From positions 6,448,001-6,512,000 of the forward strand of contig OZ059895.1 of assembly GCA_964057225.1 (NCBI GenBank): a DNA stretch of 64,000 bases, in the 5' to 3' direction. Within the stretch, counting starts at the first letter, position 1. Each line of letters opens with the position of its first letter. The stretch comes from Auanema rhodensis (lineage: Eukaryota; Animalia; Nematoda). A program made the position numbers and the translations under genes. Positions 4,255 to 21,010 of the stretch are shown here, piece after piece. The notes beneath the pieces were generated by a model. The model was not told the origin of the DNA, did no database searches, and saw nothing but the letters and a program-made list of their open reading frames with translations.

Positions 4255-4615
4255 AGTAGTATAGGAACGAGGGATTATAATACCATTTTCGACATTTCAG
4301 TCATTTCAACACATTTTCATTCTCTGATGTCAGAGAATCAACTCATTTACAACACTTTTTTGAAAAAAAGTGAGAAGTAAGTGAATTTTTGAAGCACTAA
4401 AAAGTGCTTATCTTTAATAATTTTTATACATTTTCGATCAATTTTCTGTTGAGATGTCGATTTCATTTTTAATTTCCTATTTTCATGTTTAAATGCGCAA
4501 AAAATGTATCATTTTCACACTTTTTAGAAAATCAGTGGATGTCGATGGATGTCGATTTTAAAAAGGAAGTGGTATTATCTCTGAAGATAAAAATATTGGT
4601 TAATAAATGAAATTC
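4255..4615 (+). repeat. Left terminal inverted repeat (361 bp)
   Basis: Base-by-base reverse complement of 20650-21010; no mismatch found by eye. Confidence 0.97.
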
Positions 4616-5068
4616 GATAAATCCAGAGGATCTGAGAATCTAAGATTCGATAAACATTTGAAGCCATTAACAAATCTCGATCTTCTTGCTTTAGTAGAAA
4701 TACTTCAGTTAAAGAATTTCAGAGGTATCTTCATGAGAGACACTTTACCACCACAAGGAATTAAAGAAAAAGAAGTAGGTATTGTCAATCTAGATTCTTC
4801 AGATGGTAAAGGTACTCATTGGGTCTGCTATTCCAAGGACTCCAAGAATAAGGATATTTATTACTTTGATTCCTTTGGATTAGATCCACCATTAGAACTT
4901 CAAGAATATTTGAAAACCTCAAAAGAGGAAAATAAAAAATCAGTCATCGAGTTATCAACATTTCGAATTCAAGAATTCGGAACACATCACTGTGGTTATT
5001 ATTGTTTGTTACTTCTAAAATTATTAGAATCTTATGATTATCAAAAGTCAGTAATTGGTCTGATGTGA
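4607..5068 (+). CDS. Adenain-like cysteine protease (Maverick PRO, capsid maturation)
   Basis: Motifs GTHWVCY (His), YYFDSFG (Asp), Q-x5-HCGYYC (oxyanion Gln, Cys). The ATG lies inside the TIR. Overlaps the pPolB 3' end by 28 bp on the opposite strand. Confidence 0.93.
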   Translation: MKFDKSRGSENLRFDKHLKPLTNLDLLALVEILQLKNFRGIFMRDTLPPQGIKEKEVGIVNLDSSDGKGTHWVCYSKDSKNKDIYYFDSFGLDPPLELQEYLKTSKEENKKSVIELSTFRIQEFGTHHCGYYCLLLLKLLESYDYQKSVIGLM

Positions 5069-8000
5069 ATACCATCATCCATTACAACACCTTTTGGATA
5101 CACCGGAGATAAACCAGTTTTATTTAATTCATAAGTCTTCATTGACTTATCAATGAACCTGAATCCTTTATTTTCTCCAATTATCAACTCATTATTCATT
5201 AAGCAAGCTAAGTATTTCTCTTTTACCAAGATATCACTATTTCTACCCTTTTGAACTCCTTTAGCAGACATTTTATTTTCATGCTCATTCCAAACAAAGT
5301 AAATCTTACTATTCAATGCAATCATTCCATCACCTTCAAATTCAACTTTAAATAATCCTGGTGTTCGTTTATCGAATGCTTTGAACTTCTCATCATCCCT
5401 AGGGAAAAATTTATATTTGTTCTCTTCGAATTCTTTTCTGAGATGAGGTTTAATCAGACTTTCAAAATCTGCAGCAAGAGCCATATATGATGAATCTGTA
5501 TCCATTTCTAATCGTTGATAATCTTCCCTAGGTATAAAATAATCAATGCAATCATAATTGAATTGCAACATTCTCAACTTAGAATCATCGTACACACTAC
5601 AAGCAATTTGAATTGGCATGTTTTGCTTAACTTTTTTCGATTTCTTAACCACTTCATATGTTCCATTTCTATGTTTATTTTTATCCATTCCAGTTACTCC
5701 AAAGGCAGAATTTCCGACTAATTTAGCTCCTTCAGAAATTATAGCGTACTTTTGATCAACATCTCCTTTACGTCTTTCATCAGATACCCAATTCATAAAA
5801 TCTTTGAAAACTCTCCCTCTTTTAGCTTCTATGACTCCATGTAATTTTGTAACAATACAACCATGTTCCAACATCCACCTCAATCTTGTAGATTTGATAA
5901 GAATTTTTTCAGCTTTTAGAATAGTAACAAGCTTTTTACTTTTAGAAGGTTTTCTATCCAACGATTTTATAACTTTATTAGTATATTCACCACAAACGCT
6001 TTCATCATACTCTTTATTTACAAATATAGGACTTAATTCACCAAAATATTCCCATTTATCTTCTGGCACCTCAATATCTACTTCTAAAAATCCAAAAAAT
6101 GGGGATGTATTACTCATCAAACTCTTTTCATAAAACGAAAAATCATTTTTTTCTTCAAAATATAGTTTTCCACAAGGCATTTCTTCTCCAAGACACCATA
6201 AATATAATGCATTAGCATCAAATCCAAGTATTTTCTTGACTACGTTTCCTTCTTTATCATAATACCATTCTTTTTTATCTTGATCGTAGTGTACTCTAGT
6301 AATTTGTGTTTTATCTTTTTCATGATATCTATGAAATACTATTGAAGCTCCACCAGTTATATTATTTTTGAATTTATAAAATGCTTCTTTGTTCTCTTCT
6401 CCGAAAAGCCAAATCATAGGATGATCTTTTTCCCATCTTAATAGAGCTTTATGTCTGTAAAACTCTTTGAACAATTTCTTGGACCTTGCTTTATTGCAAG
6501 AAATACAACATGCAACGCAATTATCTTTTGTATGACTCTTGGAACAATCAAGTCTATCTAGGGACCAAGTATCTTCCTTCAAACAGAACCAACAATAGAA
6601 ACATTTATAATTTTCTCTTTTCAAGATGTCAACGACGTCTTCAACTTGTAAAATATCATCTGTCGATCTATTTGATTCTTTATCTTGCTTATAATAGTTA
6701 TAAATTCTTTTTTCTAGAATATCTTCATATATACTTAAAGTGTAATAAGTTTTGGGAGATCTTTGTTTTAGGTACTCTTCAAAACCTTGAATTTGGAATT
6801 GATACAAAATATGTTCACTCAAACCTGGCAGAGAAACTGCATCTTTATACATATCTAAATTGAAAGTGTAGAAGAATTCTTTCTGTTTCAAGCAAGCCTT
6901 CAATAAGGGTCGTACATCTAAGTTATTATACCACTCTAACAAATCTCTGACTTTAGTTAATCTTCTTTCATTACAAATTTTCATCAAAGTAGTGAAATCT
7001 TCTTCTTTCATGTGTTTATTTTTTAAAGAAGAATAGAAATCTTTGATTTTTAAATCTTTCGTCGGAAAATCTAACTTTTCATAACTATCAAACCATTCAT
7101 AAGGAAACCATCCTTTTTGTTCTCCAACATCGTAAGCTTTGAATAATTTCTCTAATGTTGTTCCAGCAGCACAATACCCCATTTGATCAAGAAATATAAA
7201 GTTATTCGTTTTTATTACTTTATATCGATTACTACCTTCTTTTATAATGAAAGGATTTTTACATCTTTCAATTATTTCACTCATAAAACCTTGATCAGCT
7301 GCTAAATTTATATCATAACCTCCACTATTGAATCCAATAATAGGAACAACAGAACAATATTGTTCTACTAGTTTCAGATTATTATAATCTTCCGCATCTT
7401 CTAATATATCTAACAATGGTGACATTTTTTCAATCATCAAATCTCCAGCTTTTTTAGATATATCATCAAAACATTTGAACATTTGTTTTATTAGGTCTCT
7501 AGGATTTTCTGATAATATGAATCTCTCCTTTTCGAATTCTGGTACATTGGAAGTTATTGAAACTGAGACTGGTGTGTGTTTACTAATGTAATTCAACTTT
7601 TTATTGTCCTTCACTACCTCTGGGTCTTGTAGATCCTTTACTTCTTCAATGATTTCATTTTTTGACTGAATAGCTTCAAAATCAAACACGACAAGATAAT
7701 CATACCTAAAGTCTACATCAATATCATAATAGTCAGAAAGTTCAACTATTAGATTTCTCTTTTTATTCCACAACTTAGGATATTTAGGAAACACATCGAT
7801 TTGTTCGAGTTGACATGTATCAATATGTCTTTGTAGATTATGATTATCTCTACATTTGAAACCACATCTATTACATAAATAAAGCTTACTCAATTTCTTT
7901 AAATCAGTTATGTATGAGAAGTGATCAAGATATAAATTTAAATAAATAGGTCTTCTTTCTTCATTGAATTTAGATTTTCTGATATAAGAAATACTTTCTT

Positions 8001-20356: not shown

Positions 20357-20559
20357 TATCTACTTCGCTAGTTATTTCCCTTCTCTCTTACGCTCTCTGT
20401 TTTGAATGTGTTGAAAAGGGGTCGCTTTTTGTGTCTCCGGCTCTTTGCTATCTACGGGTTTTGTTATTTTAAGCCTTGGTCCGAAGTAATAAAGTGTAAT
20501 CTGAATATCGTTCTCTGAACCGCTGCTATACAGGACTGTGCCTGAGACTACTGTGTACA

Positions 20560-20658
20560 TCAGTTATTTCTTGTAAAGACTTGTTTGATTCCCAATATTT
20601 CTGCTAATTCTATGAGTTCGAAGTTAGTAAGAGGCTTCAGATCTTTTGAGAATTTCAT
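20560..20658 (-). pseudogene. Truncated, diverged paralog of the adenain protease N-terminus
   Basis: Reads MKFSKDLKPLTNFELIELAEILGIKQVFTRNN* from the right-TIR ATG, versus LKPLTNLDLLALVEILQLKNFRGIFMRD in PRO. Confidence 0.75.
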
Positions 20659-21010
20659 TTATTAACCAATATTTTTATCTTCAGAGATAATACCACTTCC
20701 TTTTTAAAATCGACATCCATCGACATCCACTGATTTTCTAAAAAGTGTGAAAATGATACATTTTTTGCGCATTTAAACATGAAAATAGGAAATTAAAAAT
20801 GAAATCGACATCTCAACAGAAAATTGATCGAAAATGTATAAAAATTATTAAAGATAAGCACTTTTTAGTGCTTCAAAAATTCACTTACTTCTCACTTTTT
20901 TTCAAAAAAGTGTTGTAAATGAGTTGATTCTCTGACATCAGAGAATGAAAATGTGTTGAAATGACTGAAATGTCGAAAATGGTATTATAATCCCTCGTTC
21001 CTATACTACT
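20650..21010 (-). repeat. Right terminal inverted repeat (361 bp)
   Basis: Reverse complement of 4255-4615; ends ...CTATACTACT. Confidence 0.97.

What the first reader, a model, noticed from the sequence alone, without database searches (positions are those of the whole stretch)
4255..21010. Intact Maverick combining capsid genes, an envelope fusogen and a spliced cargo gene: a candidate infectious HGT vector
Seen: identical TIRs, intact TSD, uninterrupted core ORFs, a type I membrane glycoprotein gene among the capsid genes, and an intron-containing gene next to the right TIR. Established: nematode Mavericks with a gB-like fusogen move cargo genes between distant species (Widen et al., Science 2023), so this system type is described. 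Inference: this copy is recent and may belong to a family still producing enveloped particles in this host.
Basis: partly seen in the sequence, partly recalled or inferred. Interest (0 to 1): 0.85.

Follow-up and report, generated by a model that had tools for sequence, protein, structure and literature searches.

The report
Intact young nematode Maverick with cargo
This is a complete, apparently recently inserted copy of a virus-like giant transposon (Maverick/Polinton) in a Caenorhabditis genome, carrying capsid genes, a viral-type membrane-fusion protein and a spliced protease passenger gene: a clean example of a kind of element described in 2023, not a new kind.

Summary
A 16,756-bp element (4255-21010) has 361-nt terminal inverted repeats that are 100% identical, a 6-bp target-site duplication (AAAAAC), and uninterrupted genes for protease, polymerase, packaging ATPase, major capsid protein and integrase.

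- **Polymerase:** it belongs to the HNH-bearing "pPolB2" class of Jeong et al. 2023, with relatives in C. briggsae and Phytophthora.
- **Membrane protein:** the 780-aa membrane protein has an N-terminal ectodomain that folds confidently (pLDDT 86). That domain matches only class III viral fusogens: herpesvirus gB and rhabdovirus G.
- **Cargo gene:** the gene beside the right repeat has four exons and three nematode-type introns. It encodes a 200-codon trypsin-like (HtrA/Deg-type) serine protease, 87% identical over exon 1 to a C. bovis protein of the same length.
- **Host:** probably C. japonica, because a 98%-identical fusogen fragment is annotated there.

This matches Widen et al. 2023, so it is a new member of a known kind. 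A recent insertion is supported. Particle production or infectivity cannot be judged from sequence.

In passing, the fusogen's N-terminal domain proved to be a clear sequence homologue of the envelope proteins of nematode LTR retroelements. I found no paper in the library searched that states this link.

The parts
4249..4254 (.). Left target-site duplication, AAAAAC
   Evidence: identical to 21011-21016.
4255..4615 (+). Left terminal inverted repeat, 361 nt; begins AG
   Evidence: 100% complementary to the right TIR.
4607..5068 (+). PRO: adenovirus-type cysteine maturation protease, 153 aa. The start codon lies inside the TIR.
   Evidence: Pfam Peptidase_C5, E=8.5e-6, above its cut-off. His and Cys motifs are visible in the translation.
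5041..9426 (-). Protein-primed DNA polymerase B, pPolB2 class (1452 aa from the ATG at 9399), with a C2H2 finger, an HNH-like insert and an OTU-like Cys motif near the N-terminus
   Evidence: 1105 homologues: C. briggsae about 60%, H. bacteriophora, then Phytophthora 33-35% over the full length. Exo I-III, Pol A-C and the HNH-like Cys/His scaffold lie in columns invariant in 15/15 relatives. No Pfam or PDB sequence hit.
9502..9744 (-). 80-aa ORF upstream of pPolB; status uncertain
   Evidence: Partly matched by the H. bacteriophora protein P0094 (54% over 39 aa).
9790..10770 (+). 326-aa ORF; candidate 'puORF' of nematode Polintons, by size and position only
   Evidence: No Pfam or PHROG hit. 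The length exceeds the puORF cut-off of 300 aa in Jeong et al..
10805..11197 (-). 130-aa ORF, unknown function
   Evidence: only weak sub-threshold hits.
11405..12010 (+). 201-aa ORF, unknown function
   Evidence: no hits.
12011..12910 (-). Genome-packaging ATPase (FtsK/A32 type); likely start is the ATG at 12766
   Evidence: Pfam Pox_A32, E=6.9e-9, above its cut-off. Walker A and B motifs are visible.
12853..13257 (+). 134-aa ORF; candidate minor capsid protein, by size and position only
   Evidence: no significant hits. The length exceeds the mCP cut-off of 110 aa.
13277..13639 (-). 120-aa ORF downstream of the fusogen, conserved in a C. briggsae element
   Evidence: C. briggsae gene model P0018 matches it at 48% over 121 columns, E=3.5e-20.
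13766..16108 (-). Class III (gB / rhabdovirus-G type) fusogen, 780 aa: hydrophobic N-terminus, Cys-rich ectodomain, highly charged helical stretch, one C-terminal TM segment and a short tail
   Evidence: 24 nematode homologues. AF2 model of residues 20-300: pLDDT 85.9, pTM 0.72. Foldseek PDB top 50 are all gB or rhabdovirus G; BFVD agrees. TM segment about 708-735.
16158..17408 (+). Major capsid protein, double jelly roll, 416 aa
   Evidence: Pfam DJR-like_dom, E=4.7e-46, profile covered 1-316 of 316.
17483..18817 (-). Integrase: N-terminal zinc-ribbon-like DUF5679, rve catalytic core and C-terminal chromodomain, 444 aa
   Evidence: Pfam rve 1.2e-13, DUF5679 1e-8, Chromo 4e-8.
18818..20649 (+). 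Cargo region: GC 39% against 29% in the core
   Evidence: Matches the GC-rich, intron-bearing cargo region between the integrase and a TIR described by Widen et al..
19543..20356 (+). Cargo gene: 4 exons (19543-19863, 19980-20097, 20143-20256, 20307-20356 including the stop) and introns of 116, 45 and 50 nt. Encodes a 200-codon trypsin-like (HtrA/Deg-type) serine protease; AATAAA at 20488.
   Evidence: The C. bovis 'Serine protease' P0145 (200 aa, Trypsin_2) is 87% identical over exon 1, and relatives reproduce all exon bounds.
20560..20649 (-). Decayed partial copy of the PRO gene's 5' end, just inside the right TIR
   Evidence: about 70% nucleotide identity to 4616-4700. This is a relic of a once longer TIR.
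20650..21010 (-). Right terminal inverted repeat, 361 nt
21011..21016 (.). Right target-site duplication, AAAAAC

Best explanation
The region is one complete, integrated copy of a nematode Maverick/Polinton of the pPolB2 class, inserted recently into non-coding DNA of a Caenorhabditis genome, probably C. japonica. Shown here: perfect 361-nt TIRs, a 6-bp TSD, intact genes with conserved catalytic motifs, a class III fusogen fold in the membrane protein, and a spliced 200-codon serine-protease cargo gene. Inferred from what is established for the families involved: the rve-type integrase inserted the linear DNA and made the 6-bp duplication. The polymerase copies the element by protein priming from the TIR ends. 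The double-jelly-roll capsid protein, a minor capsid protein, the A32-type ATPase and the adenovirus-type protease would build, fill and mature a capsid. The membrane-anchored class III glycoprotein would let an enveloped particle fuse with a target cell. The protease gene is a passenger with host-like gene structure (introns, higher GC, poly(A) signal) that travels with the element, as Widen et al. 2023 describe for protease and kinase cargo.
For: TIR and TSD. Five hallmark proteins within 16.8 kb: Peptidase_C5, Pox_A32, DJR-like_dom, rve + Chromo; polymerase. Polymerase and HNH-like motifs are invariant in 15/15 relatives, including Phytophthora: matching the pPolB2 class of Jeong et al.. 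Fusogen. Seven of 16 family members give weak Rhabdo_glycop_FD hits, and retroelement ENV relatives pass Pfam Monjiviricetes_fusion. Cargo. Its layout matches Widen et al.. Recency: with no difference in 722 nt of TIR and a C. elegans-like mutation rate (2.7e-9 per site per generation, my own recollection), the 95% upper bound is about 1.5 million generations. A second, non-identical copy exists: C. japonica protein P0001 is 98% identical over 445 residues.
Against: There is no evidence of expression, excision or particles, and Widen et al. found no transcription of Maverick genes. The minor capsid protein and 'puORF' are assigned only by size and position. A signal peptide was not tested with a predictor, and the N-terminal stretch contains His-His-Asp. 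The C-terminal two thirds of the fusogen folded poorly (pLDDT about 40), so domains III-V are not shown. Identical TIRs could also be maintained by gene conversion or produced by assembly polishing. Host identity rests on one 98% protein match. None of the element's exact proteins is in the 15-billion-protein collection.
Confidence: 0.88

Rival explanations
1. The element is an older, fixed and silent endogenous copy. Its TIRs look young only because gene conversion between the two arms, or consensus polishing of a repeated sequence during assembly, keeps them identical.
For: A decayed copy of the protease 5' end lies just inside the right TIR. This shows the terminal repeats have a history of partial divergence with a sharply bounded identical part. 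Widen et al. saw no Maverick transcription.
Against: All ten ORFs of 120 aa or more are open, catalytic motifs are intact, and the TSD is perfect. Jeong et al. found all pPolB2-class copies at strain-specific positions in C. briggsae.
Confidence: 0.1
2. The 780-aa glycoprotein is not the entry protein of a Maverick particle. It is an envelope gene taken from a nematode LTR retroelement and serves another role, such as cell-cell fusion or blocking super-infection.
For: Its N-terminal domain is a clear homologue of the ENV part of nematode gag-ENV-pol and Bel/Pao polyproteins.
Against: The gene is conserved at the same position, next to the capsid gene, in Mavericks of several genera, with a full-length open frame and TM anchor. 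The fold is that of entry fusogens. A shared origin with retroelement ENV fits an entry role.
Confidence: 0.08
3. The spliced protease gene is not cargo of this element. It is host DNA that lies inside the element by secondary rearrangement or mis-assembly.
For: Its composition differs from the core: exons 46-53% GC against 29%.
Against: It lies inside the perfect TIRs and TSD. It has the orientation and position reported for Maverick cargo. Its closest relatives are in C. bovis, a species with a reported near-complete Maverick. No other copy exists in the window.
Confidence: 0.04

Closest known systems
Nematode Mavericks with the MFUS-1 fusogen and wosp/krma cargo (Widen et al., Science 2023; preprint 10.1101/2022.07.12.499685)
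   Same: Same gene set; intronless core genes; a class III fusogen with a single C-terminal TM anchor; a GC-rich, intron-bearing cargo gene between the integrase and a TIR, with its 3' end towards the TIR; the cargo is an HtrA/Deg-like serine protease.
   Different: The fusogen is 780 aa (C. plicata MFUS-1: 866 aa). [quoted passage not shown] Direct sequence kinship to a named wosp protein could not be tested here.
pPolB2-class Polintons of terrestrial nematodes (Jeong et al., Mol Biol Evol 2023, PMC10748475)
   Same: The polymerase has an HNH-like insert and its relatives lie in C. briggsae and oomycetes. The element meets their full-length criteria: five hallmark proteins within 20 kb, TIRs and a 6-bp TSD.
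   Different: It is only about 60-65% identical to the nearest polymerases found. Whether this species is among their 12 pPolB2 species is unknown, because their table is not held.
Caenorhabditis bovis 200-aa 'Serine protease' (P0145/P0308, Trypsin_2)
   Same: Same length, same exon-defined segments, 87% identity over exon 1.
   Different: It comes from another species. Identity over exons 2-4 is lower. Its own genomic context was not fetched.
Nematode LTR retroelements with gB-type envelope genes (GAG-ENV-POL 'errantiviruses', eLife 2026, PMC13524379; Bel/Pao elements)
   Same: The ENV N-terminal domain is homologous to the Maverick fusogen's N-terminal ectodomain: 31% identity over 246 aa, E=3e-38, to a C. 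auriculariae polyprotein.
   Different: These are RNA-based elements with gag, protease and reverse transcriptase. Only the first ~250 residues of the fusogen match detectably.
Herpesvirus gB, rhabdovirus G and related class III fusion proteins
   Same: Fold of the N-terminal ectodomain: Foldseek probability 1.00, E about 1e-8 against the PDB and down to 9e-14 against predicted viral structures.
   Different: There is no sequence-level match to any solved structure. Query-normalised TM-scores (TMq) are only 0.41-0.57. The best predicted-structure matches are rhabdo-like, nya- and chu-like virus glycoproteins rather than gB.

Membership tests
Maverick/Polinton, full-length (criteria of Jeong et al. 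2023) | pPolB, integrase, major capsid protein, packaging ATPase and protease within 20 kb | tested here: met
   all lie within 16.8 kb.
Maverick/Polinton, full-length (criteria of Jeong et al. 2023) | Terminal inverted repeats of 100-1,500 bp | tested here: met
   361 nt, 100% identical.
Maverick/Polinton, full-length (criteria of Jeong et al. 2023) | Target-site duplication of 5-8 bp (6 bp tested) | tested here: met
   AAAAAC on both sides.
Maverick/Polinton, full-length (criteria of Jeong et al. 2023) | Length of 13-25 kb | tested here: met
   16,756 bp.
pPolB2 class of nematode Polintons | Polymerase related to oomycete Polinton polymerases rather than to the common nematode pPolB1 | tested here: met
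   Phytophthora proteins match at 33-35% identity over 99-100% of the searched region.
pPolB2 class of nematode Polintons | HNH nuclease domain inserted in the polymerase | tested here: inconclusive
   A Cys/His-rich insert with 8 invariant columns is shared with C. briggsae and Phytophthora relatives. No Pfam HNH hit was found, and the nuclease fold itself was not modelled.
pPolB2 class of nematode Polintons | Exo I-III and Pol A-C motifs conserved | tested here: met
   All six motifs lie in invariant columns.
Maverick fusogen (MFUS-1 / PC1), class III | Domain I/II fold of class III fusion proteins | tested here: met
   Model pLDDT 85.9; top 50 PDB matches are all gB or rhabdovirus G.
Maverick fusogen (MFUS-1 / PC1), class III | Single C-terminal transmembrane anchor | tested here: met
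   One hydrophobic segment at about residues 708-735.
Maverick fusogen (MFUS-1 / PC1), class III | N-terminal signal peptide | tested here: inconclusive
   The N-terminus is hydrophobic, but no signal-peptide predictor was available and the stretch did not pass the 19-residue hydropathy threshold.
Maverick fusogen (MFUS-1 / PC1), class III | Central coiled-coil helix (domain III) and trimer formation | tested here: inconclusive
   Long helices are predicted at 301-364 and beyond, but at low confidence. No multimer was modelled.
Maverick fusogen (MFUS-1 / PC1), class III | Membrane-fusion activity | not testable with these tools
   No functional assay is possible from sequence.
wosp (preprint: WASP) cargo proteases of nematode Mavericks | HtrA/Deg-like serine-protease domain with a His-Asp-Ser triad | tested here: met
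   His and Ser motifs are visible in exons 1 and 2. Intact relatives P0145/P0146 pass Pfam Trypsin_2 and weakly match Deg proteases. The exons alone gave no Pfam hit.
wosp (preprint: WASP) cargo proteases of nematode Mavericks | N-terminal ubiquitin-like domain | tested here: not met
   The 200-codon model and its 200-aa relatives start directly with the protease domain. No ORF upstream could encode such a domain. Widen et al. call this domain modular.
wosp (preprint: WASP) cargo proteases of nematode Mavericks | Sequence kinship to MSFT-1 or another named family member | not tested
   No named member came back from any search, and the exon-sized query admits only candidates of about 64-203 aa.
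wosp (preprint: WASP) cargo proteases of nematode Mavericks | Located inside or next to a Maverick, between the integrase and a TIR | tested here: met

The most novel reading that the evidence does not exclude
The Maverick fusogen is not a separate, herpesvirus-like acquisition. It is one branch of a single pool of class III envelope genes that nematode mobile elements of three unrelated kinds share: DNA-based Mavericks, Ty3/gypsy GAG-ENV-POL elements and Bel/Pao elements. Its nearest viral kin would be rhabdo-like and chu-like (Monjiviricetes) glycoproteins rather than gB. If so, envelope genes have moved between DNA and RNA mobile elements inside nematodes. The homology itself is shown here. 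The direction of transfer and its novelty are not: I found no paper stating the link in the library searched, but the journal version of Widen et al. could not be read.
Probability: 0.5. Interest if true: 0.55.

Novelty: new member of a known kind. Interest (0 to 1): 0.4.

Why it matters
Intact copies with identical ends are the few Mavericks that could still be mobile. They are therefore the natural reference points for asking how these elements move genes between nematode species. This copy combines the rarer pPolB2/HNH polymerase with a fusogen and a minimal protease cargo. It also shows mosaic cross-genus similarity: up to 93% amino-acid identity to Heterorhabditis in part of the polymerase, 87% to C. 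briggsae in half of the fusogen, and 87% to C. bovis in the cargo. That makes it a useful data point for the horizontal-transfer picture, but it does not change that picture. The fusogen's sequence homology with retroelement envelope proteins gives a concrete handle on where the Maverick fusogen came from.

Tried and rejected
- Pfam on the whole polymerase and on three pieces of it found nothing, even at E<=10. PDB sequence searches with the polymerase and the fusogen found nothing.
- A PDB search with the fusogen family profile gave only coiled-coil noise from the charged stretch.
- AF2 of the full-length fusogen with 16 sequences gave pLDDT 40 and was unusable. It was replaced by a domain model built on a 65-sequence alignment.
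- The cargo exons searched one at a time gave no Pfam hits and no meaningful PDB hits.
- PHROGs on the small ORFs gave nothing significant.
- An exact look-up of ten element proteins found none in the collection.
- The supplementary table of Jeong et al. is not held.
- Searches for other copies or fragments in the window (blastn, tblastx) found none.
- Pfam on large ORFs elsewhere in the window found only one host exon, a ubiquitin hydrolase.
- Rejected readings: free viral contamination, because the element is flanked by a TSD and host DNA; and a pPolB1-type element, because the polymerase relatives are of the pPolB2/oomycete type.
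Full report
**Observation**

The inverted-repeat search returned one outstanding pair, 4255-4615 and 20650-21010. A script confirmed identity at all 361 positions and showed that similarity falls to background immediately inward. The six bases outside each repeat are AAAAAC on both sides. A chance match of six bases at this composition is about 4e-4. The element is 16,756 bp long. No other copy or fragment is present in the 64-kb window.

**Core genes**

ORF listing shows a compact, intronless set on both strands. 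Pfam identifies four of them above curated cut-offs:
- an adenovirus-type protease (4607-5068, +), whose start codon lies inside the left repeat;
- an A32-type packaging ATPase (12011-12910, -);
- a double-jelly-roll major capsid protein (16158-17408, +; E=4.7e-46, profile fully covered);
- an integrase with a zinc-ribbon-like domain, an rve core and a chromodomain (17483-18817, -).

The 1461-codon ORF (5041-9426, -) has no Pfam or PDB sequence match but has 1105 homologues. The nearest are metagenomic and C. briggsae proteins at 60-65% identity. A long series of Phytophthora proteins follows at 33-35% identity over the whole searched region.

In an alignment of 15 such proteins, the window's Exo I-III and Pol A-C motifs all fall in invariant columns. 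So do a C2H2 finger and eight Cys/His/Asp/Arg/Asn positions of a Cys-rich insert. This is the signature of the pPolB2 class of nematode Polintons, which Jeong et al. 2023 describe as sharing an HNH insert with oomycete elements. I did not model the nuclease fold itself.

All proteins exceed the length cut-offs those authors used for intact genes. The element also meets their criteria for a full-length Polinton. The 326-aa and 134-aa ORFs are called puORF and minor capsid protein only by size and position.

**The membrane protein**

ORF 13766-16108 (-) encodes 780 residues. It has a hydrophobic N-terminus, nine cysteines in residues 25-300, six N-glycosylation sequons, a stretch that is 59% charged residues at 296-365, and one hydrophobic segment at about 708-735 followed by a short tail.

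It has 24 homologues in the word-indexed search, and every one that carries a species name is from a nematode. These include many C. briggsae proteins and one that its source names 'Glycoprotein'.

Testing the gB likeness went through several steps:
- A first full-length AlphaFold model with 16 sequences was unusable (pLDDT 40).
- Sequence searches against solved structures gave nothing real.
- Seven of the 16 family members gave weak, sub-threshold matches to the rhabdovirus G fusion domain.
- An exhaustive profile search then found 374 related clusters. This allowed a 65-sequence alignment of the N-terminal ectodomain.
- The model of residues 20-300 from that alignment has pLDDT 85.9 and pTM 0.72.
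- Against the PDB, its top 50 matches are all class III fusion proteins: gB of eight or more herpesviruses and G of VSV and Mokola virus. E-values are about 1e-8, probability is 1.00 and TMq is 0.41-0.47.
- Against predicted viral structures the class is the same. There the best matches are glycoproteins of rhabdo-like, nya- and chu-like viruses and two entomopoxvirus proteins (E down to 9e-14, TMq up to 0.57), ahead of gB.

Domains III-V, trimer formation and activity are not shown.

**The cargo gene**

Between the integrase and the right repeat, GC content rises to 39% against 29% in the core. On the + strand an ATG directly follows a TTTTCAG acceptor-like site at 19543. Four exons follow, separated by introns of 116, 45 and 50 nt with GTGAGT/GTAGTA donors and TTTTCAG/ATTTTAG acceptors. 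Exon GC is 46-53% and intron GC is 17-27%. The exons sum to 200 codons plus a stop, and an AATAAA lies at 20488.

I did not make or search a joined protein, and that step is left out. The second intron is in frame and free of stops, so exons 2-3 could also be read as one uninterrupted stretch.

The exon-1 ORF finds four relatives. The best is a 200-aa C. bovis protein named 'Serine protease', which carries Pfam Trypsin_2 and is 87% identical. Mapping the two intact 200-aa relatives onto the window reproduces every exon boundary, including the 15-residue gap at intron 2. The relative weakly matches Deg proteases among solved structures. The His and Ser active-site motifs are present in exons 1 and 2.

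Widen et al. describe Maverick cargo proteases as HtrA/Deg-like, with an N-terminal ubiquitin-like domain that is modular. This cargo has no such domain. It therefore works like that family, but full membership is not established.

**Host and relatives**

The closest fusogen match is a C. japonica protein, 98% identical over 445 residues with five mismatches. That is a second, non-identical copy or allele, and it points to C. japonica or a close relative as the host. The splice signals and the short introns fit Caenorhabditis. A ubiquitin-hydrolase exon at 61372-61725 shows that the window is host chromosome.

Similarity to other genera is mosaic:
- a polymerase segment is 93% identical to a Heterorhabditis bacteriophora protein, while the adjoining part is 76% identical;
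- the C-terminal half of the fusogen is 87% identical to one C. briggsae protein, while most C. briggsae homologues are about 50% identical;
- cargo exon 1 is 87% identical to the C. bovis protein.

This pattern fits the horizontal spread and recombination reported for these elements. It is not a test of it.

**Age**

With no difference in 722 nt of terminal repeat and a mutation rate like that of C. elegans (2.7e-9 per site per generation, from my own knowledge), one change is expected per 5e5 generations. The 95% upper bound is about 1.5e6 generations. Gene conversion or assembly polishing could mimic this.

**Comparison with what is known**

The architecture is the one described by Widen et al. 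and catalogued by Jeong et al., who list 266 full-length copies in 29 species. I could not check whether this copy is in that catalogue. None of its exact proteins is in the large protein collection. The verdict is a new member of a known kind.

**A finding in passing**

Beyond the roughly 25 Maverick-type proteins, nearly all hits of the fusogen profile match only its first ~250 positions. Those matches lie inside long polyproteins of nematode LTR retroelements, with gag, zinc-knuckle, aspartyl-protease, reverse-transcriptase and integrase domains. The sources include C. auriculariae, Meloidogyne, Ancylostoma, Globodera and Ditylenchus.

The direct pairwise comparison with the C. auriculariae polyprotein gives 31% identity over 246 residues, E=3e-38. 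Two of these proteins pass Pfam's 'Monjiviricetes_fusion' model where the match lies. Their domain order (gag-ENV-pol) is that of the nematode 'errantiviruses' with gB-type envelope genes. One hit is of the Bel/Pao type.

The errantivirus paper does not mention Mavericks, and the Widen preprint treats retroelement envelope capture as an analogy. I found no paper stating the homology.

- I fetched no DNA of related Mavericks from any collection, whether by pattern, look-up or accession. Copy number, empty sites and nucleotide-level comparison therefore remain open.
- The element has no broken genes to count. The only decayed piece is the partial protease-like relic just inside the right repeat.

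Noticed in passing
window 13766-16108 (-), residues about 10-270; proteins P0156, P0162, P0198, P0199, P0205 and others: The fusogen's N-terminal ectodomain is a sequence homologue of the envelope part of nematode LTR-retroelement polyproteins of the Ty3/gypsy gag-ENV-pol and Bel/Pao types. About 230 clusters match at E<1e-10, and the pairwise comparison with a C. auriculariae polyprotein gives 31% identity, E=3e-38. I found no paper in the library stating this link between Maverick fusogens and retroelement envelope genes.
   Followed up: partly
window 15209-16051 (-) model; fold search: In the library of predicted viral structures the best matches are glycoproteins of rhabdo-like, nya- and chu-like viruses and two entomopoxvirus proteins, ahead of herpesvirus gB. 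'gB-like' is right for the fold class, but gB may not be the nearest viral relative.
   Followed up: partly
window 20560-20649 (-): A decayed partial copy of the 5' end of the protease gene lies just inside the right TIR (about 70% nucleotide identity to 4616-4700). An ancestral TIR therefore reached further inward than today's 361 identical bases.
   Followed up: partly
window 10022-10055 and 11201-11234: A 34-nt inverted repeat, 94% complementary. One arm lies inside the 326-aa ORF and the other just upstream of the 130-aa ORF. It is far beyond chance in 16.7 kb, and its role is unknown.
   Followed up: no
window 9502-9744 (-): An 80-aa ORF lies directly upstream of the polymerase gene. A Heterorhabditis protein matches it with residues that also match the polymerase N-terminus, so it may be a duplicated N-terminal motif or a small conserved gene.
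   Followed up: no
window 5041-9426 (-), residues about 388-395 and 509-525 of the polymerase: The N-terminal third of the polymerase carries an OTU-like Cys motif and a C2H2 finger. Their Cys and His positions are invariant across nematode and Phytophthora relatives. Neither domain was modelled.
   Followed up: partly
window 6624-7191 against protein P0094; 13769-15079 against P0008: Cross-genus similarity is mosaic. One polymerase segment is 93% identical to a Heterorhabditis bacteriophora protein while the adjoining part is 76%. The fusogen's C-terminal half is 87% identical to one C. briggsae protein while other C. briggsae homologues are about 50%. This suggests recombination among elements from different hosts.
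   Followed up: partly
window 206-424 and 1292-1521; 61372-61725 (-): The left flank contains (CT)n/(GA)n microsatellite tracts and no evident gene. An exon of a ubiquitin C-terminal hydrolase (Pfam UCH, E=4e-11) lies about 40 kb to the right of the element. The GC content of the window rises from about 30% to about 40% beyond 38 kb.
   Followed up: no
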